Positions 7,279 through 56,700 of a DNA stretch of 64,000 bases are shown here, one piece after another. The notes beneath the pieces were generated by a model. The model searched no databases, was not told the DNA's origin, and saw only the letters and a list, made by a program, of their open reading frames with translations. This DNA is from Hyphochytrium catenoides. Taxonomy: Eukaryota > Protista > Hyphochytriomycota. The stretch covers positions 1 to 64,000 of the forward strand of contig FLMG01000016.1 in assembly GCA_900088475.1 (NCBI GenBank), in the 5' to 3' direction. A program made the position numbers and the translations under genes. Each line of letters begins with the position of its first letter. Positions within the stretch are counted from its first letter, which is position 1.

Positions 7279-10226
7279 TTGGCTGCACAATGCATCGCTA
7301 TACAGTGCTGCAGACAGGAAGACTGTGCAGCGAAATGTTACAATGAACAGACATCAGGACGGTCCACTTCCATTCTCGCGTCGGTAAGGGCCAGAAGAGG
7401 CACACAGACAACGCAAGGCAGAATCACCCGTCCGCAGCGCTCTTCGATCTTGCAGAGTGCTGAAGTTGCCTCTCTTGAGGAACAACTCAGTGGATCAGGG
7501 TCTGACAGGGAGACTGTCCCCACGCTAGACGCGGAGGAGGAGATGGATTTCGAAGAGGCAACACTGGATGCAGAAGCCGTTTCTCATCCCCAATGGAATG
7601 ACGAAGGAGATGAGGAGGAGGACGAAGAGCACTTTCTTTTCTCTCTTGAGAGGGAGATCAACGCTCTAGAGATGTCAAAACACTGCAGCCTTGCCGGAGA
7701 TAGCTTCAGAATTGGTGGGGACTATGCAAATGACGGACCTTTTAGCCCATATCAGGTGAGGCACGGAGGAGAGACGAAGGAGAGATGGGGACAGCCTTTA
7801 GACCACGGCCCAAGAAGAGAGTATATCGGTGACGTAAGGCGGAAGTGAAAGGGCTGATGCCGAGGGCGTTGAAGTCTTAGAGACGGGTGTGGTGCTAACT
7901 CTGATCTTCTGGCAGAGCCCAAGGAGCGAGAGCAGACCAATCTCCGCTACCCTTCCTGTCTCCCCATTTTCTCGCTGCGCTTACAGCAGAGGGCGGACCC
8001 AAGCCCAAAGGTTCCCTCTTTCTATAACCCTTTCTATCCTAAACTCTTCCAAACTCATCCTTTGGCTCTTGCATCGTCGGGTTGGTAGTGGTAGCTGTAG
8101 GAGAAAAGAACAGAGAAAGCAAGAAGAGAAAGAGGAAGAGAGGAAGCGAAAGCGAGAGGACCAGCAGCGACGAATCAAGGTGCTTCAACCTTGGCTCTTT
8201 GTCCCGGCTGCTGCATCTGTTAGATGTTCCAAGATCTCCAGCTATTATTCTCTTCGTCTCTCTTTCTCTGTCTTTCTCTTTTCCTTGTATCTCTCTTCTT
8301 CTCTGTCTCTCTCTCTTTCTCTCTGTCCAACGCACATTCTCGCCCTACTTTGCCCTAGACGTCTGCTTAAGAAAAACAGCTCTCTGGCAGTCTCACGGTT
8401 TCTACTCTCCCCTCTGCCCTAATTGCACGGCCAGTCTTACCACCTGCGACTTCAAGGACAACGCTCAGCTATCGGAGAGCTAGAAGCCAAGGTTAAAAGC
8501 CAGGTGTCACTCTGCTTCCCTTTGTGACTTCCTTGTTGCCGTACACACGTGATATAAATGGCCAACATAAGCTTGCAGTCCTCAGATTCATCTATCCTTA
8601 TATTGTCTCACACTCTGTCTGCTTCTTTCTGTCTTTCTGGGGGCGCATTAGGCCTCTCTGCTTGACCGTTTGAGGGCTAGAAACTCCCACTTGGAGGAGC
8701 GCTGTAAGCGCCTTGAGGAAGCTGCAAAAGTCCAAGCGGCTATGATGAGCACTCGCGTCAGAACTTGGAGGGAAATGGATACTNNNNNNNNNNNNNNNNN
8801 NNNNNNNNNNNNNNNNNNNNNNNNNNNNNNNNNNNACTAGTGAGCGTTGAACGCAGGGAAGACTCTGCTGGAAAATAGAGTATGCACGAGAAAGCAACGT
8901 ATCCATGTCTCTCGTTTCATTAGCACTTAGGTTCTATATCTTAATCTTGATCTCTACAGGTTCGGAAGCTACAAGATACGCTTCAGGAGACCAAACGGAA
9001 GGCATCGAGAGCTGAAGAAGGCCGGGAGCAGCTCAAAATGGTGCGCAAAATCTAGGAAAGCTCTCCTTTGTTATCTGGTCTCATGGTCTGTCAGCTCTTC
9101 CACTACTTGTTTCATTTTTACTCATGCCGACCTCTTTGCCTTCATAGAGGTTGCAGCAGCTTTCACATAGCGCAGCGGAGACCGGAAAAGAGCTCAATAA
9201 CCTCAGAACGGACAACTTGGCACTTAGGAACGAGGTGATCCTCTCACTGTGTGGCTAGGCGGCTCTACCCTCCTCCGCCTGCCTTGCGGAGTCACTAGCT
9301 CATGCGGTTCCAATCATTGTTAACCTGGCTTTCCTGCTTTCGAAAGCCTTGGCGTTGCTGTTATGAGTTAGACTGTTGCTTGCGGCGTGCCTTTCAATAT
9401 CATCTTCAAGCTTCTTCGTTTTTGCCATGTCTGCTGTTGCCCTGCCATTGGAACCATCTAATGCCCCTAACCTGTTCCTCTCTCCTGCATCTCCTTCCGA
9501 TGCTGCAGAATTTGAACCTGCGGCTAAAAGTGAAGGAACTGCTCGCTTCTAAGGAAAAAGTATCCGAAACTGAGAAGCTACCCCGCGCACAGGTTGAAGA
9601 GAAAGTCACAAAGGTGTGTCACTGGATATTCTTGTCCCTTTCCCCTTGTTTCCTTTTGCTGTAAGGATGTCTTATCTATGCCCGTCTCTTTGCGTTGTCT
9701 AAGTCATGGTCTCCAAACCGAAAGCAGGGAAAGGGAAAGCAAATGACGGCAACCAAAGGCCTGCTCTCCAGAGTTGAAGAGGTAACGCTCTCTACATACT
9801 ATGAGTCTGTCATGCTATCACACCTCTCACTCTCAATGGGACCAAACGTCCGGCGCGCAGCTTGTGAAAGAAAATATTGATCTGAAGACGCAACTTGTGA
9901 CGCAAACCCAGATAAAGAATTTGGGCCGAAGCCGCACAATCCTAAAGAAGGATAAGCAAAAGATTGCATCAAAAGAAGGATCAGAGAACCACCCTTCCCG
10001 AGCAAACTCGTCATTTCTGGCCAAGAGCCAGGAACGCTTTCGCGGTTCATCCTTATACTCTTCATCAGGATCAGAGGACGAGAAGGGCGGAAATAGAGAG
10101 GAGAGAACCGCCTACAAGCCTCAAAGACCTGGAGTTAGGTTAGAGGATGATCTTGGAATGACTACTCGCCTGCGACGCCTTACAGAAATGTACCAACGTG
10201 TGAAGCTGCAGAAAGAAGAGGGCTAG
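7279..10226 (+). CDS. Multi-exon protein with an acidic N-terminal region and coiled-coil segments, function unknown
   Basis: Acidic exon (DEGDEEEDEEHFLFSLEREINALE), then short coiled-coil exons (LQGQRSAIGELEAKVKSQ, RKLQDTLQETKRKASRAEEGREQLK, NLNLRLKVKELLASKEK, RLRRLTEMYQRVKLQKE) with GT-AG boundaries. Both ends uncertain; contains an assembly gap. Confidence 0.6.
8784..8835. other. Assembly gap (N run)
   Basis: Run of n characters. Confidence 1.
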
Positions 10227-11237
10227 GTTGCTGTGTCCGTCTGTGACTCATTCTCCCGTCACTTGACAACGCTCATCTATTTATTAGGACCTTCCCTTCC
10301 TCACATGGTCCAAAGATCCCACAAACTGATGTTGAAGTCGAAGCTTCTCTGCCCGGCTTGTCTTTATAGGGGGGCATAAATGTCTGTATAGAGCCCTACA
10401 GAATAAAGTTGCGCCCTGTTCTGTTCCCAAGGAAGCCTCGCCTTCTGATGCCTTGCTCTGTTTGAGCCTATGTCTGATGATCCTCCAGGAAGCCCATGGA
10501 CCGATGCATTATCTATACTACGTATTACCTCTTGTCAAATCATCACTATCTATAGACAGAAGGAAGGCTAGAGCAGTGGCACCACGTTGTATTTGGGAAG
10601 CGCACGAGCCCGTGCGCAGCACGAACATGTCTTCCCCATGGAAGTGCTTATCATGGTCGCAACACTTCGTTATCAAGGAAAGTAGCCACAAGCGGCGACG
10701 TTTCATTTGGGGCAAATATTCTTCTACAGTGCGTCACGTTAGGGTCCGTGCTATCTAGGTTAGTCTCACGAAGCAAGGAGAGCTGTTCGCAACAGCTTCT
10801 TGCTTTGGTGGAGTTGAAGATTTTGAATTGCAGAGCGCTCTTGCTGCAACCGCGTAGGGTTTGGCGCTTTTTAGCGTCATCCATTCTACGAGGCACGCCA
10901 TTCAAGAGCTACGCAAGGCCGCAAAAAAAGAAGAAAAGCCAGACACCATCCAAGTAGAGAGAGAGAAGAAGAATTGGATCCAAATCAGAACCAAAGCCAT
11001 CTTGCATGGGAGCACAGCACCTTCCAGGCTGAGGTAGCGGGACCGTTAACAAACGACCTGTGCGGCCCAACAGGAGCTATCTTGCATGACGCTGCGAACA
11101 GGTCAGTAGCGCATACAAAGGCCAGTACATTGTACGATCATTAGGTACTTCATTATAACAGAAATGTGGTGCTTCAGCATGTAAACAGGTGCCGGCACAC
11201 GGAGTAGCGCTGGCTCATTGCTTTTCGTGCCATTCTT

Positions 11238-13973
11238 TTAGATAAAAACGTAGTGTGGCATTCTCTTGGGGTCAAGAAGGCGATAGGGCAAAACATTATC
11301 TTCGTCTGCTCGCTTATTGATGTCTTTCGAGATTGCTGCCAGAGACTTCATGAACTTGGTTACAGTGGAAGCGGTAGCGGCATTGTTGAAGTCAGCAGAC
11401 TGCAGCCCGTCATAAAAGACTTGATCAGGAGTCATCGGCCTCGCAAACATCAATCCTGTGAGTATGACATCCAGTGCGACAGGGTATGGGGGCAACCACT
11501 CAACAATGTTTGTGACCCCTCCTTTTGTCGATGGTATAGCCTTCCCAATTGATGGTGTCTGGAAGGGAACTGTCATGCCCAACTGGAACGGGTTGTAGGC
11601 GTTCATCGCATGGTGGCGAGTGGTGCAGAGATGGACAAAGTGGGCTAGATGGCTTGATAGGTCATCAACGGTCGTGAAAGAGGATGGAAAGCCCTTGACT
11701 TTTCCGGGGTCGCCAGTCTCCGCAGCCCATTTCTGCAACTCTTGGTCACCAGCGACCGCGCTGTCGCCTGGGTAGTAAACCTTAAGGTAGTCAGTGATAA
11801 ACCTCTTCGTTGCTGCGTTTATGGCCAAGGCGTCCTAAAGAAGGGAGAGTGATCAATGAAAAGTTAGACCATGCCAGCCAGTGCATAGAGCTACTAGGCC
11901 AAGAATGGTTGAGCCAGGTTTCAAAGAACGTTACTGGGCAAGGATAGGATTAATGCAGCGGAGCCGGCCCCTAAACACCTTTGCAGACTAAAGCAGGGAA
12001 CAACGTACCACGAAGTAGTCAAAAGAGGGTAGAATATCACTCAGTCCTCGGGTTTGGATCTGGACGTCCAACATATCTTTTTGCCAGGTCCATCCTTGAA
12101 ATTTTATAGCCGTGAGCAACTGCGACCCTGCAGCCCCAAGGGAGTTCGTTCGATCACGAGTGCCACTGTCCGAAGGGTAGAGAAGCCTGAAAGCAGCGAG
12201 AGAGTTGCCAAAGAGAATCTTCGTATAAAATTCAAGCAATGCGCGAACCGGGTGATTCTTAGCCATTGTCCGGTAAAGTGCAACTTTGATAGGCTCAAGC
12301 GCAATGTGGCTGGACACAAAGTGGTCGACATTCTGCTCCTGAATGGCTGCGCTGTTGAAGAAGATTTTGGAGAGTAGCCAGTCATTGGCACTGTCCCTCG
12401 GAGAGAACACAAGTCCACCAGGAACTTCCACTTGGATACCTAAGACTGACAACGCCCCGTCCTCGTTGGGTGAGTATTGAAAGAGCGCGATGGGATTCCC
12501 CATAGCTCTCCCTGGAACAATAAATGGCTTGATTACTCGGAGATAAGATAGATCAGCAATGTAGAGCCGGCCAGAGCCCAACAATGTCTCTAGAGTGCTC
12601 GGCGCAAGCTGAAGATTAGCGTCCGTGAAACCCTCCGGAACTGCCGTCGCCTTCTGGAGCAAATGTGGGTACGAGGTAAAAAACTGCCTGGCGAATAGCT
12701 CATCGCTGGTAAAGTCATGCCGATTCAGCTCCGGCACATCGCCAAAGAACTCATAGAGGGCAAGGTAGTCCTTAAGGGATTTAGGCACCTGGGTGGCAGT
12801 AGAGCTGAGCGCGAGAAGAAAGCTTGGAAGAACCTTTTTCTGATAAAATGGTAGAAGCTCGCCCATTAGCTGAGCATACTCTGCTTCTGCAATGATTAGT
12901 CCTTGGGACCCGTGAATGGTGGGAGAAATGCCTGCTCTCGGTGAGTAAGTAATGCCTTGGGAGCTGACCGCCAGCTGGAATCCTCGGAGGAAAGTCGCCG
13001 GATCATTACTTGGTAAAGAGAGATCTCCACTTAGCTGCTGGGCCACCATAGTGGCAGCACTTTGGAGGCGGCTCAAGGTTAAGGTCATTTGCGGCCGTGA
13101 GAAACCGGGCGGTAACTGCTCGTCTAGAAGGAAGGTCCGAATATCGGATACTTTGGCAACCCCTTCCTTCCCCAGTCTGTGAAGAATCAGAGCGGCTTCA
13201 TGGAAGGCAGATGTGGACACCATAGGATTCCAAGCGAACTCTGGGTTCTGCTTCTTGGACTCTAAGAAGCGGATTTTCCTAGCAAGCGCTAATTCCTGAG
13301 CGCGAAGCGTTTTGCCGTCAGCAGAGAGTGACAAGAATGACTTGACAAGAGAGGCGTTGACCGCTGATGGATCGCCCCCAAGATAGGCGTCGTTATGCAC
13401 TAGGGAGGCATCATGTTCCGCTGCATTATGCTTTGAGAGATCAGAGAGGGCAAAGCTATTCATGTCCGCTATTGCTCCCAACTTCTTGGCACCTGCTACG
13501 ACTATCATTGAGAGCTCTGGGTCCACGTTGTAAACGGCGTCAAGCGCAGCGATGAGGCTACTGACACTCACATCAGCACCGTTCCGGTTGATGTAGCCAT
13601 GATTCGCAAGAGCGTTCAGTCCCGGACAAGGACTCCGTTTGAATGGCGCCGAGTTTCCTGGTACTCCGGAGACCTTGGTTCTGGGCGGCTTATAGTAAGC
13701 TCCGACTCTCAAAGACGGATTGTAGTCCTTCAAGAGCTCATCCTCTCCACTTCGCGATTCAGGTCCATAGTTTCGCGGGCGGTACGACCGTCGCATGCCG
13801 CCTCGCCTCTCCTGGAAGAGCTGTTGGAGGTCTTGGTGGAAGGGTAAAGGAAAAGCCTGCACAGTTACCGATTCCATTGCTGTCTGAAATGAGATCAGCC
13901 CCATTATTAGGAGCAAGGCAAGGGCTGAGCAGCGGTGGGATACAACGCACAGCGGCGCCATCCTTTGCCACAT
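11238..13973 (-). CDS. Secreted fusion of a heme-thiolate peroxidase/unspecific peroxygenase (chloroperoxidase family) domain and a lipoxygenase; 2 exons (13973-12009, 11834-11238), about 853 aa
   Basis: Signal-like hydrophobic N-terminus. HTP motifs RSPCPGLNALANHGYINRNG, AEHDASLVHND and a distal Glu (AFHEAALIL). LOX motifs SDELFARQ, DWLLSKIFFN, HFVSSH, HPVRALL, DQELQKW, HLCTTRHHAMN and a C-terminal Ile (PHYVFI*). A phase-0 GT-AG intron at 11835-12008 joins FDYFV|DALAINAA in frame. Confidence 0.92.
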
Positions 13974-15688
13974 ATGATGTTGGCGGCGTCCTACCACGAT
14001 CTGCCGCGCTGACCTCGCAAGTCACGAAGTATCAATGGTTCTGAAGTCCACCAATGTCGCGAAGAAGAAGTGATGACACGACACAGTTGCTATAATATGC
14101 TGCGATGATAGTCGCAATCGCGGCAAAAAGGAGAGGACCAGATCAACCCTGTGGCCGATCGATCCAGATCTTCCTTGTCAATGATCGTCAAAGAGAAGAC
14201 AGGCAAGTGATAACTACGACGGGCATGGAATCTGGCGGGTCGCCTGAATGACAAATGGACAGATTGAACTAGGTCGTGCCGTTGCTAACAAGCAAGTGAA
14301 TTCTTACTTTATAGACAAAGCAAGGCAGGACGAGGGATGCAACCTCTTTTTTATGGCTAGAAGAGCTCAATCATAGATTTATAAACATTGAGACTATGAT
14401 TGAAGACCATTAGGAGCTCCAGCTTCGAGATTTTTAGCTAACCGCTAAACCCTCCTGTGACATCGAAGGAGCGCAGAGGCACTGCCGCTCTCTCTTGCTG
14501 TTCCCAAATCAAAGATACCCTTGCCGATCTCGAAGGGCAGCAGATGGGGAAGAGGGGAGAGATCGACCTCCCGAGATCATGGGTAGAGAGGAGTATCTCG
14601 GACATGGGCGGCCCTGACAAGATAGGAAGGTAGGGAGGAGCCATCAATCATCATCCAAAGCCAATATCTGCGAGTACTTCCAGTTTATCAGTGGACGAGA
14701 TTGGTCGAGGAGGTACCGAGAGATTGAGAAAGGCGAATGTTTAGGTTCAGCAGGCTAGTCACTCCTAGTATGAGTACATTTCCGCCGACCAAGAGAACAT
14801 GAGATAAATGTGGTTTGTCATCAGAGAGGAGGGACAAGAAGGATAGACCAACAAGAGGTACAACAAGAGGAAGGTAAAGGTGGCAGTGACAAGAAGGGTC
14901 CGTAGTGAGAGGAGAAGAAGAACAAACCCACTAATAATCTTAGTCGCAAAGGCCGCTTTCTTCTGTCGGTGGTGTTACTCAGTAAGTATATAAAAAAGCT
15001 ACCGCTGATGGCGACATGATCGTGCATTCGCCTTGAAAGCGCCTACTTTTTTTCCTACTTCTTGGCCCTCTTCTTAGTAACCTTATCTGCTTACCTTATT
15101 CTTTGGGCTCCTCTTTTATCTCTGTGCAGCAGCGCAGAACTCCTTGCATGACTGCCAACACGAAAAATGGGTTCCTATGATGGCTATGGATGATTGGGCT
15201 GCTTACCACTAGGAAGCAGCAGCAGCAGGCTTCTGTTGTCGTCGGTGGCTCTTCTATCATCAGTGGTGGCACGAAGACTGTGAACTGTGCTTGATATCTT
15301 TCGCCCTCGCAGCCTTGCCACCTGTCTTTCTCTCATAGATTGGTTTGTACTGCCGCCGCACTGCTGGTCGACCGATCTGCTGTGGATCTTTCCCGCCGCG
15401 GGTGACCCTTCAAAGATCTTCAGGCGACGCTTCAGAGCTGGGCTGCCAAATAATCAACTTAAATCTGTTGGGAGGGGAGTAATCTATGGGATTGTTCCTT
15501 GGGGATGCCCAATATTATGGCGATTTCATTTTGGGAGGTTTTGGGTCTAGGGGGGTTTGGCCTTGTTTGGGTGTTGTATACTACTGGGGCGACCACTCTG
15601 AGGGAGGGGGTGGTAGCCGTTTTACTCATCATTGAGGGGGACACCACGACCTTTGGGAAGGAAACAGAGAAAGAAAGTGGGTCATGCT

Positions 15689-15690
15689 TT

Positions 15691-15727
<37 letters not shown>

Positions 15728-17453: not shown

Positions 17454-20400
17454 ATGGGGGTGGCAGATTGGGCAAAGCCCCAGGAGACCTACTCCAGCTA
17501 CAACTTCCTAGGTTCAAGTGAGACGCGGTCCTACTTTCATCAGCACTTGAAGTCAGAAGAGTTCACCACCTTCAGTCCTCAGTTCTTCTTTTGGTCCATG
17601 CTATGGTTCATTGGCTTTGCTATACTGAACGCTGCTTGGCGCAGTGGGAAGCTTGGATCTGTGGCAAGTAAACTGAGTCCTATTCGTCGTGTCCAGCTAA
17701 TGTTCCAGCTTCTAAGCCTTATTGCGAGTCTGCTTATGCTGGGAGTCATGGTAGTGGTTACGACATATGGAGAGCTCTCCACGGTCCTATACACTGGCAG
17801 TCTCACTCACGAGTACTCGGAGGAAAAGTTTGTCGATGAATGGTCCTCTCCCCCTCGTGCAGTCAAGAAAGCTTCAATGCTGATGCTCTTCGCTGGATAT
17901 GCAGTGGTGCCCGTAACCACCTTATATGTCATGGAGATTCTAGGCGTTTCCTTAACGATCTCGCTTTCTCCTGCAGCAGCCACTGAAGCCAGCAGAAGGC
18001 AGGCTACTCCACAAAGCCCATCTTCTGCTGATACCGACCGGCGCATGGTCGCAGAGACACCTCCCCCTCAGACTATTGCCGACAAGCCTCCAGCAGCTAG
18101 GGTGGATAGTACCGCTGATGACTCTGGCAGCAGAAAAGACGCCAACATCGGAGTTGTAATGAAAGACAGCGCCAGCAGGCGCAAACGGAGTGCCGAAGGT
18201 GGTGATAGTCGTCTGAGTCCCACGGATAATGGGAGCCCGATGTCCCCGGTAGTGGCAAGATATCCTCCTGATAACTCCCTTGCTGGCAGCACAAGGGAGG
18301 GAGAGGAGGAGACGGCAATGACCCGTAGTCTTTTGGTCGTGTTTATACATCACCTTATCGTCCTGCTGCTCTACTGCATGGGTCTGTCACCGATGTTCGA
18401 GTGTATGGATATGGCCTACTTCAGGATGGCATGGATCCTCTCTCTGCACATTGCTTTGGAGTTCCCCTGCTTTCTCGCTATCATAGCCTATAGAGTGAGC
18501 GATAATAAGCACCTCGTGAGGCGCGGTATGGAAGGATGTGCCATCTACACTCTCATTCTGCGGATCTCTGTCAATGTCCTCGCGTTTCTCTCCTACCTGG
18601 ATATCGCTTGGCTAAGGCTGAAATTCACTGACTGGGATCTCTTCTGGCGCTGGACATTTCCTTGGATTTTCATCATCCTCGTCCTAGCTCAGCTGTACAT
18701 AGTTCGCATCTATTGGATCATCCGCACCAAGGCCATGATGGAGACTGAGACCCTTGACCTGTCACTACAGAGACAGCAGCTGGAGTCTGGAAGGGGCAAG
18801 GAAGAAATAACTAGTTTAGGTGACAATAAGGTTGTTCAGCTCTCCTCTGCAGAAGATGGCGTGAACTCAGTGGATGGATCGAGAGAGAGAGCGAAGAGCG
18901 GGTTCTCCCAATCCTCCTGGTCGTCGCCAGCAGCTGCGCGCTTCACCAAGGCTACTTCATCTATGATGTTGGCCCTGGAGGTCCCAGCAAGCGGTGGAAG
19001 GTCTAACAACCGAGTAATGTACGACAAAGCAGCTGCTCCTGCTGGTACCCTCATGGATTACTATCTACGCCTGCCTTTCAAAAGGTTAACAGTCCTCGCT
19101 ATCTTCTTCTTATTCTTGATTTGCGTACTATTCATCTGGATCCCATTCTCCTGTGAGACATGCTCCATAGCCAAGCAGCGCGTAGCTGTCATTGGAGGAG
19201 GGCCAAGTGGGCTGGTGGCCGCATGGACTCTAGCCAAGACCTCACCTAACTTTGAGATAACGCTCTTCGAAAAGGACAACCGCTTAGGAGGCGCAGCCTA
19301 CACTTCCAACTATGTGGACGAGGATACTGGCGTGGTAACTGGAATAGATCTGGCCTTCCGAGCCTTTATAGACTACTATAACTTTGAGGATCTTATTGAT
19401 GAGCTCGGCATCGACGTGGATAAAGAGATAGAGTCCCTCTCCACTGGCTTCTCTTCACAGTTCAACGATCAAAAAGCAAACGAGAGTGTGTTTGTTACCT
19501 CTGCGGAGTTTTCTCGGCCCCTCGCTGCTGGAAAGTCAAAGTACGACTTCCATATGGAGCGAGTTCGGCTGAGAGAGCTCTTGGAGGACGCTTCAGCGAC
19601 GTACTCGGAGGAAGTGCTCATGACAAAGACTTTGGGCGATTTCCTCAATGAACATAACTTTTCTCGTGTTTTCATTGAGGTGCACATGAAGTCCTGTCTC
19701 TTCCTTTACGTGGGAACAGCAGCAAAGTATCTCTCTACCCCTCTATCCGTAATTCTATTCCTGGAGAAGAATGTACACATTTGCACGTCGATGGATATGG
19801 ATGGCCGAGCCTTGACTAAGAACTTCAGGAATGGTACCCAGGTGTATGTAGAAAGGCTCGCGGCGAGGTTACGGGAAGACGGTGTCACCATCCGGACGCA
19901 GACTGAGGTTCAGAAACTCTCCCCAAGCTCAAGGAGTGGCCTCCCACTAAGGACGACAAAGACAAATGTCCTTCTGAATGGTGGCCAGGAGGAGGAGTTT
20001 GATCACGTCATCATCGCGCTCAGAGTCCCTCATCTTATACCCCTGCTTGCCGCAAGTCCAGATAGCTTTCACGCTCTGAATATTCCTAGAAGGCTGTATA
20101 ATACGGCCAACATGGAGATCACTGACGTCGCAGCGGTGGTGACAGCGGCCAAGAATGGACGACACTCTCCCATCGACATCATCTCCGCTAACTCTCTTAG
20201 CGGCACCAGGCCGAGTACTCTGATTGTTGACGACAAAGATTCCAACCAGACCAGGCAATGCTACATGTTTGAGCAATGCAACCATTTCCCAGCCGACATC
20301 AAGGATGACCTCTCGACGACAGAACCGGTATCCATCGGCTTCCAGTTCTTTGACGTGACAAAGTGCTATGACAAGGAGTCCATGAACTCCGTGGGTCCTT

Positions 20401-20774
20401 TCATTCTGTACGCTGCGACTCCGCTCATCGAGAAGCTTCTCAATAACATGAAGGAGGAGTTTAGTGATGCCAGTATCACAGCTCGGTTCAACGTCACCAC
20501 GCATACGGTGGGGTTCGCTCTCGGTGCTCGAAATATGCACAAAGCACAGGGTCTTCATAATATCTGGTACGCGAGTGCTGACTTCTCCAGCCTCAACCTG
20601 CATGAGTTGGCAGTCATCAATGGCATGGCCACTGCGCAGGCCATTGGGGGCAGGTATCCGGACACTAAGAATGCGCTCGCCGTAGAGAGGTTCTTGAGAT
20701 TTCAGTATTGGCTGATGTATGGGGTTAATCCCTTTGTGGCCAGATACACTGAGAGAAGCTCAAGGAGACTATAG
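17454..20774 (+). CDS. 1106-aa fusion of an N-terminal multi-TM TLC (TRAM/LAG1/CLN8)-like domain and a C-terminal FAD-dependent amine-oxidase-family oxidoreductase
   Basis: Intronless ORF with several TM helices carrying a TLC-like pattern (LYVMEIL...VFIHHLIV...ALEFPCF...ILR). After a further TM come a Rossmann motif VAVIGGGPSGLVAAW, LFEKDNRLGG, IDLAF, FDHVIIA and a C-terminal QGLHNIWYA...LHELAVINGMATAQAIG. Confidence 0.8.
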   Translation: MGVADWAKPQETYSSYNFLGSSETRSYFHQHLKSEEFTTFSPQFFFWSMLWFIGFAILNAAWRSGKLGSVASKLSPIRRVQLMFQLLSLIASLLMLGVMVVVTTYGELSTVLYTGSLTHEYSEEKFVDEWSSPPRAVKKASMLMLFAGYAVVPVTTLYVMEILGVSLTISLSPAAATEASRRQATPQSPSSADTDRRMVAETPPPQTIADKPPAARVDSTADDSGSRKDANIGVVMKDSASRRKRSAEGGDSRLSPTDNGSPMSPVVARYPPDNSLAGSTREGEEETAMTRSLLVVFIHHLIVLLLYCMGLSPMFECMDMAYFRMAWILSLHIALEFPCFLAIIAYRVSDNKHLVRRGMEGCAIYTLILRISVNVLAFLSYLDIAWLRLKFTDWDLFWRWTFPWIFIILVLAQLYIVRIYWIIRTKAMMETETLDLSLQRQQLESGRGKEEITSLGDNKVVQLSSAEDGVNSVDGSRERAKSGFSQSSWSSPAAARFTKATSSMMLALEVPASGGRSNNRVMYDKAAAPAGTLMDYYLRLPFKRLTVLAIFFLFLICVLFIWIPFSCETCSIAKQRVAVIGGGPSGLVAAWTLAKTSPNFEITLFEKDNRLGGAAYTSNYVDEDTGVVTGIDLAFRAFIDYYNFEDLIDELGIDVDKEIESLSTGFSSQFNDQKANESVFVTSAEFSRPLAAGKSKYDFHMERVRLRELLEDASATYSEEVLMTKTLGDFLNEHNFSRVFIEVHMKSCLFLYVGTAAKYLSTPLSVILFLEKNVHICTSMDMDGRALTKNFRNGTQVYVERLAARLREDGVTIRTQTEVQKLSPSSRSGLPLRTTKTNVLLNGGQEEEFDHVIIALRVPHLIPLLAASPDSFHALNIPRRLYNTANMEITDVAAVVTAAKNGRHSPIDIISANSLSGTRPSTLIVDDKDSNQTRQCYMFEQCNHFPADIKDDLSTTEPVSIGFQFFDVTKCYDKESMNSVGPFILYAATPLIEKLLNNMKEEFSDASITARFNVTTHTVGFALGARNMHKAQGLHNIWYASADFSSLNLHELAVINGMATAQAIGGRYPDTKNALAVERFLRFQYWLMYGVNPFVARYTERSSRRL

Positions 20775-24900: not shown

Positions 24901-27900
24901 CAGTCAGTTTGGTCCAACATAACAAAAGAGATTACTTCCGAGAAGAGAGAATAAAAGAGGAATAAGCACACCCTACCGCTGTCATTTTCCACGGGAAGGA
25001 AGAGGTTCCATAGTCCAGCGGCTTTGGCCTTCCCTTTCAGCTGTTCTACTAGTGGTGCCCGGGCCTTCCACTGTCATGCATATGGAAATAAGTATATAAA
25101 GAACAAGTATATGTATAAACTAGGTCTCTAAAAACATAAGGTAGCCGAGAACAATGGAAATGGAGTGAAAAGGTTGTGGCCGTTCAGAGGTAGCAAGGAA
25201 GTGAAATGCTGGTCTAACAGCATCTGCGTGGCAGCGGTCACCCTGTTAGAACAGCCAGGGTATTCCGTGAATGAGTGAACCACGTAAAAGCACAACGGTA
25301 GAATGTCACCTTATGTGAAGAGTGATAGTTGTGGTGCAGGATCTGCTGTTCAACGGGGAGAATCTCATCTCTGACAAATTCCTTCACTTCCTTCAGTAGC
25401 TTGGTTGCCTTCTCTGATAGTCCATAAGGGGGCTGTGAATTTAGTGGTTAACGCCAACAGAGAGAGTCAAGTAATAAGGGACGAGACTATCAAAGATCAG
25501 TGTTTAGCGAGAGGGACGTAGGTTTATGAGAACAAGGGGGGAAGTTTTGTGAAGACTGAGCGACCACGTCTCGATTAAACTTACTGAGATGCTGTCTCTG
25601 CCGACTGCCCGGGGCAGTTCTGCCTTGGCAGTTGCATGGAATCCTCCACTGAAGGCAGCGCCGGTTGCCGACATTTCAGCATGATGCTGCTGTATCAGTT
25701 CATTTCCTAAAGGAAGTCCAATCCGTGCAGTTAGTAGACAGCAGGATTCGATATGGGGCACCAATGGTCCATAATACATAATCAACCACGGAGTCAGGGG
25801 ATGCAAGGAGGATCACCTTTCTTCGCCATTGCTGAGGCTAGTCGACCCACAGCCACTGCCTTATGGGAGCTGGCATTGCCCTGCTGGGCTCTACAATAAA
25901 CACCCTAGGCCCGGTTATTGTTAGCATCTAGTACCGCCAACATAGGTCCCACAAATGAAGAGCAGACATAGCTAGGAGCATGAGTAGTGTATATGAGCAA
26001 GCACACCCTAAGCGATAGGACGGGTGCAAACAAATTGAGCTATCAGACACTGCGGGAAAGGACGTGCAAAAATAGAGTTGCCTTTGACACAAAGAGCAAT
26101 AGGGGTGCGCTTTTCACCTGCAAGATTGCTGCCACCCTAAAGAACGCGAAGGCAACGTAGAAGTTCCAGTTCTCAATACCACCAGTAGGAAGCCCCGCCC
26201 GACGACAGTACTCATCCAGATGCTCCTGTAAAGTGGGGATGGCCAACGCGGAGTGATCAATTCCCTAATGAGAGCAAGATGAATGTTAGCTCAAACTTTA
26301 TAGCAGAAAATTGGAGCGAAGAGGTGAGAAGTGAACTATTGCAACATCTTAGATAGACATATCTCAGTTGCTCTAGCTTACCTCTAATCCTCCAAGAGGT
26401 GGAGGGGTTCCCTGCTTGAGATAGTACAGCAAGGAGTTAAAGGCCAGGTCACTCATAGGGTGACCCAGGGTTGATAGCTCTATAATGATAGGGAGACCAC
26501 CAGGTGAGCAGCTGAAAACCGTAAAGAGAAAAAAGAGGAGGAGATGGCGCTCACCCCAGTCTAGAATTCCTTCCACCTCCAAAGTCTTTTTGTTAAAGAT
26601 CATATTGTCCAGGCGTAGATCTCCATGCACTAAAGTTGTTTGGTCGGTAATCGTCCCGACGTACATCTCAAGGTACTCAATCAGCTTTTCCATGGCTCGA
26701 GGATCGTGGTCCGGAGTCAGACTTGCCTATGCGAATAATTAGAGGGATAACTCTTTCCCCTCTACAGCTGCCGGAATGTATCTCGTTGTACCACACATCT
26801 TGTCCGATGCCACATCAGTCCCCACCTTTCCTTCTCCCTTTTATTGATCCTGGCGTCGCCACACATTCCCTTGCACCTCCATCCCGGACTCACCTTGTAC
26901 TGAGTGGTCCAAGTCTTCATTTGACGTTCAAAGTACCTTCCCTCTTTTCCATAGTCGGCTAGACCTACGAGACGGTTAGATAATGCGGTTTTTCCCCACG
27001 GTGAACCCCGTAATCTTTAGTCTGGCGTTGACGCTGGGACAAAAGTCAAATATTACGTCACAGATCACACCGGGTAGCACTAACATAGCATAAGCCCTCA
27101 CTTAAAAGAAGCCCGGCCTATCGTCTCCCGTACGGTTGGACAAAAGCAGCTAACAGGCTTGCCCTGTCCATAACTTCTGACTGTGCTTACCGATCGCCTT
27201 GTAGTCCACCTTGTGTAGATCAGCGATCTTTTGTACCATGGAGATATAGACTCTCTTCCTGGCGCTCCCGTTACTTCCGAGCTCATCTAAAGTCGGCTGC
27301 TTGAATAAAAACCCTGGGGTGTAGTCGTAGATGTAGAAGGGAGTCCCGATTACGGAGCGATCCTCACAGTACAGACGGACGTTAGGTACTGGGATGTTGG
27401 TCCTAGAGCCCAAAGCCTTCATGATCTGAACATCGCGATGAAGGCAGGAGCTCAGATTTGATCGAGGAAGAGCGGTTAACACTGATGTTTAAGGGTTTCA
27501 TTGCCCAGCCAGCCAGCCTTTCTTAAGGGGCCAATCGGACAGAGAGTATTTGTGCGTACCCGATACTCTCGGTCGACAGCGTGTGCCCCTTTCAGAAGCT
27601 TGCCGTGCGGCTGACGTCTGAGCACGAGCGGAGGAAATGAGTCGGACCTTATGGCGTACGTCTATGACAAGAGAGTAAGCCGATTTGCCTTTTGAAGCTC
27701 CACACCGTTTGCACCTACCGGATTACTCTGTCCATGACTAAACCGGCGGACATAGATTTGATCAAAGTCATTGTGGCGCATCTCAGGAATCTTTGGCTTC
27801 AAATAATCAAGCAGCTTCTGAAAGTCTACATCCTTATTCCTGTGTGCAAACGTATGTTGATAAAAAGTAAGCCTTACCCTTAACCCAGCATATTGGGATA

Positions 27901-53763: not shown

Positions 53764-56700
53764 TTACTCACAGTGGCGATAGATGGCCACTGTGCGAGCT
53801 GGAATGTAGACCTAAAGCATAAAGGCATTAGTCAGCTTTTTGTGGAAGGGCATGAGGTTAGAGTCTAACGGTCTAGTAGAACCCGAGAGCGTGAGCAGGA
53901 GGCAAGAAGGATAAAGAAGTGAGCCGACAAAGAGTCCATCTGATATAAGAGTCAATCCGCATAGACAGTTAGGGCTAGAAGTCTAACCTGCATGCTATTC
54001 TTCCGGTTGCAGTGCGGCATATCGCGGGTAAAGTACTCAGCATTCGCATCAAGACGCTGGTGGCCACCAAACTCAGCCCTGTCGCTGTCGGTTAACAGCA
54101 TGTACTTCCCAGGCCTGTCAACGCCAATTGCATAGTCTGGGAAGCTCTGGTGGGAGTTGAAACTGAAGACAAAGACAAGACCTGCCTTCTCGAAAACGAT
54201 GACCTTGTCCTGCTCGTGCTTCAAAGATATGTACGCGTCCGTCGCCAGAAGTACGTTGTACTGCTTATCCATGCTATTCATTGCCCTGTCCCAGTTATTT
54301 AAATGTTGATAGCGCAGTAGTGGGTCGTCGACAAGGTTCCATTGTCTCCTGCAGTTGTGGAAGCTCCAGTTATTGCCCTGTCTTGGAAAGTCAATCCACT
54401 CAGGATGGCCGAACTCGTTGCCCATAAAATTAAGCCAAGCTTCTCCTCCGAGTGCATAGGTAAGGGTCCTAATCATCTTGTGCAAAGCAATACCACGGTC
54501 GACGATACCGTTCACAGGGTGAACCGTTGACATTCCGGTGTACATTTCCTTGTCCATCAGCCAGAAAGCAAGCGTCTTGTCTCCGACAAGAGCTTGGTCG
54601 TGGCTTTCTGCGTATGTGATCGTTCTCTCGGAGTAGCGGCGGTTAGTCAAAGTCCAGCAGATGGCTGACATATCCCATTGCTCATCGGTAGATTCCTTCA
54701 GCAGTTTGATCCACATGTCTGGGACAGCCATAGCAAGGCGGTAGTCAAACCCGACTCCTCCCTCCTTGACGGGTCGGCACAGTCCAGGCATGCCTGAGAC
54801 ATCCTCGGCGATGGTAATAGCAGGAGGGTTCATCGTGTGCAGCAGTTCATTAGCCAGCTGAAGGTAGACAATGGCATCATCATCCGTCATTGACCGGTCA
54901 GAAAAGTACTCTCCGTAGTCTCCGCTGAACCCAAACCCAATGCCGTGGTGCAAATAGAGCATCGAGGTCACGCCGTCGAACCTGTAGCCATCAAACCCAT
55001 ACTCGTCCACCCACCAACGGCAGTTGGAGAGTAGGAAACGTAATGTCTCGAAGTTGCCATAGTTAAAGATCCGAGAGTCCCATAGCTCATGCTTCCCTCT
55101 AGGTCCCGCGTGGAAATAATGCGCATCAGTGCCATCAAACATGTTGATGCCGTCCAGGACATTAGTGGAGGCGTGGCTGTGGACGATATCCATAATAACG
55201 AGCATCCCAAGCTCATGCGCCCTATCCACAAGGGCCTTCAGGTCATCAGGAGTGCCAGAGCGAGAGGACACAGCAAAGAAGTTCGTCACGTGATAACCAA
55301 AGCTGCCATAATAAGCGTGCTCCATGATGGCCATCAGCTGTACGCAGTTGTATCCTTGACGATGGATGCGAGGCAGAACGTCGTCCGCAAACTCCTTGTA
55401 GGTATGAACACGACCCTCGATGCCGGCCATCCCGACGTGGGCCTCGTAAATCCTCAGCGCTTCGTTATCAGGTAACTTCTTCCGTGCAGTTCTCCACTTG
55501 TACTTCTCATCTGGATCCCAGTGTACGGCGCAGTAGCTGAGGCTGTTTTCATTGACCTGTTGGACGGCATAAGGCGCCCAGCACGGGATGCGGTGCTCCA
55601 TCTTTCCATCTGGTCCAGTGACGGCGCACTTGATCCTGCTCCCGTGTTTGATCCTCTTCCCTCCTTCTGGAAGATCGCTGATGAAGCAATACCAGTCTCC
55701 AAACTCTGAGCGTTCCATGGGGTTGGCATTGGCGTCCCAATGATTGAAGTCTCCAATGAGAGCTAGTCGCTGTGCTGCAGGAGCCCACTCCCGGTAGTGG
55801 TAGCCGTGCTTTTCCCCATCATAGATGAGTCCATAGCGCTTGTAGCCCTTGGCAAACTCATGCAGCCCTCCGCCGTTCTTCGCAATGTTTTCCTACGGCA
55901 GGGAGAGAAACGGAACACTCAGTACCGCTAGAAGAGACGAAAAGAGACGACGCCCTTAGAAAGTAACTGGAAGCCAACCGCCGCAAAATGCTAGTGTCTA
56001 GGCAAGATCATGGACTCAAGGGGTTGAATAACGTCCGATAGGCCCTTCAGGCTCACCTTGACCTGCTTATACCGTGAATAACGGCCGCGCAGAGTGTTCT
56101 CATATGGCTCCAGCCACGGATCAACAGCAATTAGCGCCGTACCGTCAGTCGCATTTCTAAACCGGTGGGGCCCTGTCTGCCACACATCTTCAAATAGAAT
56201 CTGGAGAGAGGCAACGTCAGATTTGTCCTAGGCATGGATGACTAGCCTTCTTGGTTAGGCGAGAGGTAGCCAGCAATCTAAGGAACAGGGATAATCTGAG
56301 AATACAGGCACAGATCAAGATGAATGGCATCAAGGTATGGAAAAAGAAGGACGAGCAAACCATCACAATGACCTCGAAGTATAGGGCCAAGAAGTCAAGG
56401 AGAGATCACTGGTCAAGCGCAGCAGGGGCAGGTAAGCCGCTATATATACATGGACTTTGGCCAGTAGATGCTGAGTCAGGAGGTAACCCTCTCCAGCAGC
56501 CTTTCTCGCCATCTCTTATGTATCGCCATCTCAACTCACCTCGCCAATGTCTGAAGAGACGATTCTCTTATGGTTGTCTCCTTCATTCCAGATCTTCTCC
56601 TCTGGATTTTCTTCATTGATCATCACGTACTTGTACTCGAACGGCCAGTCACGAGGCAGGTGCACTGAGGTTTCGTAGACCTTCTGTCCATGCTCTTCAT

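What the first reader, a model, noticed from the sequence alone, without database searches (positions are those of the whole stretch)
11238..13973. Secreted heme-thiolate peroxygenase-lipoxygenase fusion: a candidate new self-contained oxylipin synthase
Seen: one reading frame carries a complete short-type HTP/UPO domain (about 13645-13090; PCP proximal Cys, EHDAS, distal Glu) running straight into a complete lipoxygenase (His/His/His/Asn ligands plus C-terminal Ile). The domain junction lies inside exon 1, so it is not a splicing or gene-model artefact. Known: LOX makes fatty-acid hydroperoxides, HTPs use peroxides to epoxidise, hydroxylate or halogenate, and the described hydroperoxide-channelling fusions are catalase-like AOS-LOX (corals, cyanobacteria) and fungal dioxygenase-P450. 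I do not know of an HTP-LOX fusion. Inference: the LOX domain supplies lipid hydroperoxide as co-substrate or substrate for the peroxygenase, giving an O2-driven, H2O2-independent peroxygenase that makes epoxy-, hydroxy- or halo-oxylipins outside the cell.
Basis: partly seen in the sequence, partly recalled or inferred. Interest (0 to 1): 0.93.

Follow-up and report, generated by a model that had tools for sequence, protein, structure and literature searches.

The report
Peroxygenase fused to lipoxygenase gene
One intact gene joins a heme peroxygenase to a lipoxygenase in a single, probably secreted protein; only one other (unstudied) example was found, so it is a plausible oxygen-driven lipid-oxidising enzyme of a kind nobody has tested.

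Summary
A two-exon minus-strand gene (13961/13973..12009 and 11834..11238, one 174-nt GT-AG intron) encodes about 849 aa. It has a signal-peptide-like N-terminus, a poorly constrained spacer, a complete short-type heme-thiolate peroxygenase domain (PCP Cys, EHD, distal Glu) and, in the same exon, a PLAT-less lipoxygenase. All five lipoxygenase metal ligands are present, including the C-terminal Ile. Genomic contigs from three public DNA runs cover the junction. Allelic differences are mostly synonymous in both domains, and indels fall only outside the coding sequence. No RNA run was listed, so transcription as one mRNA is untested.

The architecture is rare but not unique. Of the 150 closest lipoxygenase representatives, one is also a fusion: a hypothetical protein of the chytrid Blyttiomyces sp. 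JEL0837. Its lipoxygenase domain has lost both His of the first ligand motif, it sits beside two intact lipoxygenase genes, and it is not sister to ours in the tree. The nearest relative of our lipoxygenase is a stand-alone secreted enzyme.

No paper describing the fusion was found. The scan's notes, searched by word, record no lipoxygenase elsewhere in this genome. Hydroperoxide hand-over from lipoxygenase to heme is the best reading but is inferred. Halogenation is unsupported.

The parts
11238..13973 (-). Whole gene (CDS with stop); start codon at 13973 or, in better context, 13961
13854..13961 (-). Signal-peptide-like N-terminus (about 36 aa, hydrophobic core with Kyte-Doolittle mean up to 3.0)
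   Evidence: hydropathy only; no signal-peptide predictor available
13692..13853 (-). Charged, poorly constrained spacer or possible propeptide. Over residues 35-96, which also take in the end of the signal peptide, 6 nonsynonymous against 3 synonymous allelic differences
   Evidence: AF2 pLDDT below 50
13089..13691 (-). Short-type heme-thiolate peroxygenase domain (Pfam Peroxidase_2): PCP Cys 13626-13628, EHD 13410-13418, distal Glu 13197-13199
12009..13088 (-). Lipoxygenase domain, exon-1 part, no PLAT domain: His ligands 12321-12323 and 12306-12308; Ala at the Coffa-Brash position 12195-12197
11835..12008 (-). Only intron, 174 nt, GT-AG, phase 0; it holds the only indel seen within the gene between alleles
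11238..11834 (-). Lipoxygenase domain, exon-2 part: His 11613-11615, Asn 11601-11603, C-terminal Ile 11241-11243, stop 11238-11240

Best explanation
Shown: this is one intact, selectively maintained gene for a roughly 849-aa protein. It has a signal-peptide-like N-terminus, a short-type heme-thiolate peroxygenase (HTP/UPO) domain with all its catalytic residues, and, directly after it in the same exon, a PLAT-less lipoxygenase with all five metal ligands.

Inferred: the protein is secreted and works as a two-step oxylipin enzyme. The lipoxygenase domain adds O2 to a polyunsaturated fatty acid to give a hydroperoxide; Ala at the Coffa-Brash position suggests S stereochemistry, and Fe versus Mn cannot be told. 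The neighbouring heme-thiolate domain takes that lipid hydroperoxide instead of H2O2. Its Glu/His acid-base pair would favour heterolytic O-O cleavage to Compound I. Compound I would then return the oxygen either to the same chain (epoxy-alcohol or keto products) or to a second substrate (epoxide plus hydroxy fatty acid), as plant caleosin peroxygenase does.

The heme partner sits at the N-terminus because the lipoxygenase needs its free C-terminal carboxylate as a metal ligand.
For: The frame is continuous across the junction. Genomic contigs of runs X1-X3 cover it; X1 record 3 spans 11995-13709. Over residues 100-861 the listed allelic differences are 14 synonymous to 5 nonsynonymous, and indels fall only in the intron and flanks. 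HTP motifs align with CviUPO 7zcl, a short UPO reported to epoxidise unsaturated fatty acids (PMC11719350). Lipoxygenase ligands align with MnLOX 5fno and ALOX15B. The lipoxygenase part has AF2 pLDDT above 90 and Foldseek probability 1.0 to lipoxygenase structures. A second HTP-lipoxygenase fusion exists in a chytrid, with its junction also inside one exon and two lipoxygenase genes next to it. Its lipoxygenase is not sister to ours, so the pairing either arose twice or has been kept for a long time. Other lipoxygenase relatives carry pathway partners at the N-terminus: catalase, P450+ACBP, patatin. GC3 is uniform across the domains and neighbouring genes.
Against: No RNA evidence that both domains lie on one mRNA. 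No biochemical data on any HTP using a fatty-acid hydroperoxide was found. The chytrid fusion has lost lipoxygenase metal ligands, so coupling in cis is not required in that lineage. The closest lipoxygenase relative is stand-alone. The AF2 model gives no usable geometry between the domains, because the HTP part has low pLDDT. Only two fusions are known, so the conservation argument is thin.
Confidence: 0.5

Rival explanations
1. Both domains are active but chemically independent. The HTP uses H2O2 from elsewhere to epoxidise or hydroxylate lipids or other substrates, and the lipoxygenase peroxidises fatty acids. Fusion only ensures that they are secreted together and act in the same place on a lipid-rich substrate.
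For: Both domains match stand-alone secreted enzyme families. The nearest lipoxygenase relative works alone. Short UPOs act on fatty acids with H2O2 (PMC11719350).
Against: The same two families are paired in two unrelated lineages and clustered with lipoxygenase genes in the chytrid. That is more than co-secretion would predict. Known N-terminal lipoxygenase partners are pathway enzymes.
Confidence: 0.22
2. The lipoxygenase-like domain serves mainly as a lipid or hydroperoxide binding and presenting module for the HTP. Its own dioxygenase activity is dispensable, and hydroperoxides come from other lipoxygenases or from autoxidation.
For: In the Blyttiomyces fusion the positions of the first two His and the Asn ligand read Asn, Ser and Ser. 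The HTP motifs are kept there, and two intact lipoxygenase genes are adjacent.
Against: In this window all five ligands are intact. The lipoxygenase part shows 11 synonymous to 4 nonsynonymous allelic differences. No other lipoxygenase gene lies within the 64-kb window.
Confidence: 0.13
3. Gene-model artefact or unexpressed relic: the frame is open, but the locus is not expressed as a fusion (internal promoter, or silent gene).
For: No RNA run holds it. The protein is absent from the protein collections searched. No relatives were found in JGI metagenome contigs.
Against: The frame is 2.5 kb long with a single canonical intron. Purifying selection acts on both domains, and indels lie only outside the coding sequence. 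All catalytic residues are intact. The genome seems simply unannotated.
Confidence: 0.08

Closest known systems
Hypothetical protein KAJ3327329.1 (HDU76_011981) of the chytrid Blyttiomyces sp. JEL0837 (P0008)
   Same: Same order and content: signal peptide, Peroxidase_2 with PCP/EHD/Glu, then a PLAT-less lipoxygenase. The junction lies inside one exon.
   Different: Only 33% identical overall (29% in the HTP part). It has 8 introns, none at our intron position. The lipoxygenase His-x4-His has become Asn...Ser, the Asn ligand position is Ser, and the C-terminus is Val. Its lipoxygenase nests among chytrid lipoxygenases, not with ours. It is flanked by two lipoxygenase genes. It has not been characterised.
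Coral allene oxide synthase-lipoxygenase and cyanobacterial catalase-lipoxygenase fusions (PDB 3dy5; Anabaena and Acaryochloris proteins, PMC11719350, PMC5617202)
   Same: An N-terminal heme enzyme is fused to a C-terminal lipoxygenase. In those proteins the heme domain consumes the hydroperoxide made by the lipoxygenase. This is the mechanistic model proposed here.
   Different: Their heme domain is catalase-related (Tyr-ligated). Here it is a Cys-ligated Peroxidase_2 fold with no Catalase match. The coral protein has a PLAT domain and this one has none.
Fungal linoleate dioxygenase-cytochrome P450 fusions (Ppo/LDS/AOS/EAS; PMC13049297)
   Same: A fatty-acid dioxygenase is fused to a heme-thiolate domain that rearranges the hydroperoxide without O2 or NADPH.
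   Different: There the dioxygenase is a heme (cyclooxygenase-like) enzyme at the N-terminus and the thiolate domain is a P450 fold at the C-terminus. Here the dioxygenase is a non-heme lipoxygenase at the C-terminus and the thiolate domain is an HTP.
Short unspecific peroxygenases (CviUPO 7zcl, HspUPO 7o1r, MroUPO 5fuk)
   Same: PCP-EHD-Glu signature and about 200-aa size. CviUPO epoxidises unsaturated fatty acids (PMC11719350).
   Different: They are stand-alone and driven by H2O2. Identity is only about 30%.
Fungal manganese lipoxygenases (5fno, 5fx8)
   Same: Best solved lipoxygenase match for the exon-1 part. They are secreted, lack PLAT, and have the same ligand pattern.
   Different: About 24% identity. 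Which metal this protein binds cannot be read from the sequence.
Plant caleosin-type peroxygenase
   Same: It uses fatty-acid hydroperoxides as oxygen donor for epoxidation. This is a functional analogy for the proposed second step (my own knowledge).
   Different: Unrelated fold (His-ligated heme, EF-hand protein), and not fused to a lipoxygenase.

Membership tests
Heme-thiolate peroxidase / unspecific peroxygenase (Pfam Peroxidase_2), short type | Profile match above the curated threshold | tested here: met
   166.6 bits against 26.9, E 1.1e-48; E 2e-23 to CviUPO
Heme-thiolate peroxidase / unspecific peroxygenase (Pfam Peroxidase_2), short type | PCP motif with proximal Cys | tested here: met
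   SPCPG aligned to APCPA of 7zcl; codon TGT at 13626-13628
Heme-thiolate peroxidase / unspecific peroxygenase (Pfam Peroxidase_2), short type | EHD motif (short type, not EGD) and distal Glu | tested here: met
   EHDAS is identical to 7zcl; the Glu aligns with the Glu of 7zcl and is conserved in P0008
Heme-thiolate peroxidase / unspecific peroxygenase (Pfam Peroxidase_2), short type | Binds heme and has peroxygenase activity | not testable with these tools
   Needs expression and spectroscopy
Lipoxygenase (Pfam PF00305) | Profile and fold match | tested here: met
   27.8 and 36.7 bits against 23.6; PDB E 1e-16 and 4e-18; pLDDT above 90 and Foldseek probability 1.0
Lipoxygenase (Pfam PF00305) | Metal ligands: His-x4-His, His-x3-Asn, C-terminal Ile carboxylate | tested here: met
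   Aligned to the ligand positions of 5fno and ALOX15B; codons verified, with the stop directly after Ile
Lipoxygenase (Pfam PF00305) | N-terminal PLAT beta-barrel (classical eukaryotic lipoxygenases) | tested here: not met
   No PLAT hit. The alignment to MnLOX 5fx8 starts at chain residue 28-29, right after the HTP domain. In this respect it is like MnLOX and mini-lipoxygenases.
Fungal manganese lipoxygenase | Mn as catalytic metal | not testable with these tools
   MnLOX is the best PDB hit for the exon-1 part, but identity is only 24%
Catalase-related AOS-lipoxygenase fusions | Catalase-fold heme domain N-terminal of the lipoxygenase | tested here: not met
   The N-terminal domain is Peroxidase_2, with no Catalase hit; a true member (P0058) shows Catalase+PLAT+Lipoxygenase
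Catalase-related AOS-lipoxygenase fusions | Heme domain consumes the hydroperoxide made by the fused lipoxygenase | not testable with these tools
   Needs enzymology
Dioxygenase-P450 (Ppo/LDS) fusions | Cyclooxygenase-like heme dioxygenase plus a P450 fold | tested here: not met
   No An_peroxidase or p450 Pfam hit

The most novel reading that the evidence does not exclude
The protein is a self-sufficient, O2-driven peroxygenase. Its lipoxygenase domain makes the peroxide that its own heme-thiolate domain uses, giving epoxy or hydroxy oxylipins (or oxidising other substrates) without added H2O2. This pairing has arisen at least twice independently: here, and in chytrid fungi, where the lipoxygenase half later became a non-catalytic hydroperoxide-presenting module.
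Probability: 0.3. Interest if true: 0.85.

Novelty: new variant of a known kind. Interest (0 to 1): 0.7.

Why it matters
Fusions of a fatty-acid dioxygenase with a heme enzyme that consumes its hydroperoxide were how several oxylipin pathways were worked out: coral AOS-lipoxygenase, cyanobacterial catalase-lipoxygenase, fungal dioxygenase-P450. A lipoxygenase joined to a heme-thiolate peroxygenase would add a fourth, chemically distinct pairing.

It would also give the first natural hint that UPO-type enzymes use lipid hydroperoxides as oxidant. UPO biocatalysis is limited by H2O2 supply and by inactivation by H2O2, so a natural enzyme that makes its own peroxide from O2 and a cheap fatty acid would be of practical interest.

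For the organism, a secreted enzyme of this kind could make signalling or toxic oxylipins, or drive lipid-peroxide-based attack on host or substrate surfaces.

Tried and rejected
- **Word-indexed protein searches.** Three searches (whole exon 1, its lipoxygenase part, and the alignment with P0008) returned only weak stand-alone HTPs or nothing, and did not even recover P0008. They say nothing about how rare the fusion is.
- **JGI metagenome scans.** Two scans found no relatives.
- **RNA evidence.** No RNA run was listed. The runs that hold the locus are genomic, since their contigs contain the intron.
- **Structure.** The AF2 model of exon 1 is confident only for the lipoxygenase part, because just 8 HTP sequences were in the alignment. 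No geometry between the domains could be drawn from it, so the second structure job was not used.
- **Shared origin of the two fusions.** The lipoxygenase tree and AU tests speak against a single clade, and no intron position is shared. The HTP side could not be tested for lack of a broad HTP sample. The apparent similarity across the junction is just the HTP C-terminal helix followed by the conserved lipoxygenase N-terminus, which stand-alone lipoxygenases also have.
- **N-terminus of chytrid lipoxygenase P0021.** I asked whether it is a degenerate HTP or is related to the neighbouring gene at 17454-20774. It is neither.
- **Organism identity.** It could not be established: the Atlas look-up of a neighbouring gene was uninformative, and earlier notes of the scan disagree, chytrid against stramenopile-like.
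- **Lipid gene cluster.** Pfam confirms only a FAD/amine-oxidase-type ORF and APH-domain exons nearby. Nothing ties them to this gene.

Full report
**Anatomy**

On the minus strand a 669-codon open frame (13997..11988) is followed by a 196-codon frame (11828..11238). A donor GTACGT at 12008 and an acceptor TTTAG ending at 11835 remove 174 nt in phase 0 and join the two frames. The first in-frame ATGs are at 13973 and 13961; the second has the better context.

From 13961 the product is 849 aa. Residues 1-36 have a basic start and a hydrophobic core (Kyte-Doolittle mean up to 3.0), as a signal peptide would. About 55 charged residues follow, and these are poorly modelled.

**Domains**

- *Pfam.* Peroxidase_2 lies on ORF residues 103-303 (E 1.1e-48). 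Lipoxygenase lies on both exon products, just above its threshold.
- *PDB, HTP part.* The sequence search finds short unspecific peroxygenases (CviUPO 7zcl, 7o1r, MroUPO 5fuk; E 2e-23 to 1e-17). The PCP, EHDAS and distal Glu positions align with them.
- *PDB, lipoxygenase part.* The exon-1 part finds manganese lipoxygenase 5fno (E 1e-16) and 5fx8. The 5fx8 alignment starts at chain residue 28-29, immediately after the HTP domain. Exon 2 aligns with ALOX15B up to four residues short of its C-terminus, at E 4e-18.
- *Metal ligands.* In these alignments His-x4-His, His-x3-Asn and the terminal Ile fall on the known metal ligands. Every codon was checked.
- *Stereochemistry and PLAT.* Ala occupies the position of ALOX15B Ala416. 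By the Coffa-Brash rule (my own knowledge) this points to S stereochemistry. There is no PLAT domain.
- *Model.* An AF2 model of exon 1 gives pLDDT above 90 for the lipoxygenase part and Foldseek probability 1.0 to lipoxygenase structures. The HTP part is poorly modelled because the alignment held only eight HTP sequences.

**Is the fusion real?**

The junction (about 13089/13079) lies more than 1 kb inside exon 1. Logan contigs of three DNA runs of the same organism cover it; X1 record 3 runs 11995-13709. These contigs contain the intron, so they are genomic.

The runs carry allelic or strain differences:

| Region | Synonymous | Nonsynonymous |
|---|---|---|
| Residues 100-861 (all) | 14 | 5 |
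| HTP domain | 3 | 1 |
| Lipoxygenase domain | 11 | 4 |
| Residues 35-96 (N-terminal region) | 3 | 6 |

All indels lie in the intron or the flanks. Eleven further differences were not listed by the tool. GC3 is the same in both domains and in the neighbouring genes. No RNA run was listed, so a single mRNA is not shown.

**Relatives**

An exhaustive HMMER search with the lipoxygenase part found 847 relatives, but only three below E 1e-30.

- *Closest relative (P0005, 40-42% identity).* It comes from a 1.5-kb JGI contig. It has its own signal peptide and an in-frame stop upstream, so it is a stand-alone secreted lipoxygenase.
- *Second fusion (P0008).* A home-made HTP profile run over all 150 listed hits found exactly one other fusion, P0008. 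Pfam confirms Peroxidase_2 plus Lipoxygenase. It is the hypothetical protein KAJ3327329.1 of the chytrid Blyttiomyces sp. JEL0837. Its junction also lies inside one exon, residues 220-359. Two stand-alone lipoxygenase genes lie next to it.
- *Its ligands.* It keeps PCP, EHD and the Glu. Its lipoxygenase reads Asn and Ser where the two His should be, and Ser at the Asn position. The genomic DNA offers no alternative reading.
- *Tree.* Our lipoxygenase pairs with P0005 (SH-aLRT 99). P0008 nests in a clade of chytrid lipoxygenases (SH-aLRT 100). AU tests reject uniting the two fusions (p 6e-9, and p 1e-4 with P0005 included). These groups were named after the tree had been seen.
- *Other comparisons.* The two HTP domains are 29% identical, no closer than to ascomycete HTPs. 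No intron position is shared.

So the pairing either arose twice or is old and was lost repeatedly. The HTP side could not be tested.

**Context for the mechanism**

Among the lipoxygenase relatives, other N-terminal partners are catalase+PLAT (the coral AOS type), partial P450+ACBP, ACBP, and patatin phospholipase. The partner is always N-terminal. This fits the need for a free lipoxygenase C-terminus as a metal ligand.

Known dioxygenase-heme fusions pass a hydroperoxide to the heme domain (PMC5617202, PMC13049297, PMC11719350). The closest solved HTP, CviUPO, epoxidises unsaturated fatty acids (PMC11719350).

I therefore favour hand-over of the lipid hydroperoxide to the HTP heme, giving epoxy-alcohol or epoxide plus hydroxy-acid products. 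This step is inference. I found no paper on UPOs using fatty-acid hydroperoxides, and the chytrid protein with a degenerate lipoxygenase shows that coupling in cis is not obligatory. Nothing supports halogenation.

**Novelty**

Five literature searches aimed at such a fusion found no description of one. The Atlas look-ups showed no large cluster with both families. The architecture does exist unremarked in one public chytrid protein. I class it as a new variant of the known kind 'dioxygenase fused to a hydroperoxide-using heme enzyme'.

The scan's notes record no lipoxygenase elsewhere in this genome, and one other peroxygenase note on another piece. Other agents' notes call the genome either chytrid or, more often, a stramenopile-like soil protist. 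I could not settle this.

**Surroundings**

No second HTP or lipoxygenase lies in the window. The neighbours are a GH18 gene, a FAD/amine-oxidase-type ORF (17454-20774), APH-domain exons (26373-27482) and a glucan-branching-enzyme-like ORF. I see no evidence that they form a functional cluster with this gene.

Noticed in passing
L001:4689-15720 (Blyttiomyces sp. JEL0837 contig JADGKC010000629): The chytrid HTP-lipoxygenase fusion (with degenerate lipoxygenase metal ligands) lies beside two intact stand-alone lipoxygenase genes (8256-11098 and 13583-15720, both minus). This looks like a small lipoxygenase-pathway cluster.
   Followed up: partly
Proteins P0018, P0048, P0054, P0058 (lipoxygenase relatives): Other N-terminal lipoxygenase fusions in public proteins: partial P450 + ACBP + lipoxygenase (1242 aa), ACBP + lipoxygenase, patatin phospholipase + lipoxygenase, and catalase + PLAT + lipoxygenase. 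I did not check whether the P450+ACBP and patatin combinations have been described.
   Followed up: no
Protein P0021 (Chytridiales sp. JEL 0842, 959 aa): A chytrid lipoxygenase close to P0008 carries a roughly 330-aa multi-pass membrane N-terminus with no Pfam match. It is not similar to HTP or to the window's 17454-20774 protein. It may be a merged gene model.
   Followed up: partly
window 17454-20774 (+): A single 1106-aa ORF with a hydrophobic N-terminal half and a FAD/NAD-binding amine-oxidase-type C-terminal half (Pfam Amino_oxidase, NAD_binding_8). It is the subject of another note (s1-347921).
   Followed up: no
window 11100-14200: Two haplotypes or strains differ at roughly 1% of sites, which suggests a heterozygous diploid or two isolates. 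Two 151-nt contigs of a 2025 soil metagenome match the lipoxygenase part (12214-12364, 12385-12535) almost exactly, so the organism or a very close relative lives in soil.
   Followed up: partly
window 53952-55718 (-): A 588-aa single-exon glucan-branching-enzyme-like ORF whose nearest Atlas clusters are all bacterial (score 0.97). This may only reflect the make-up of the Atlas.
   Followed up: no
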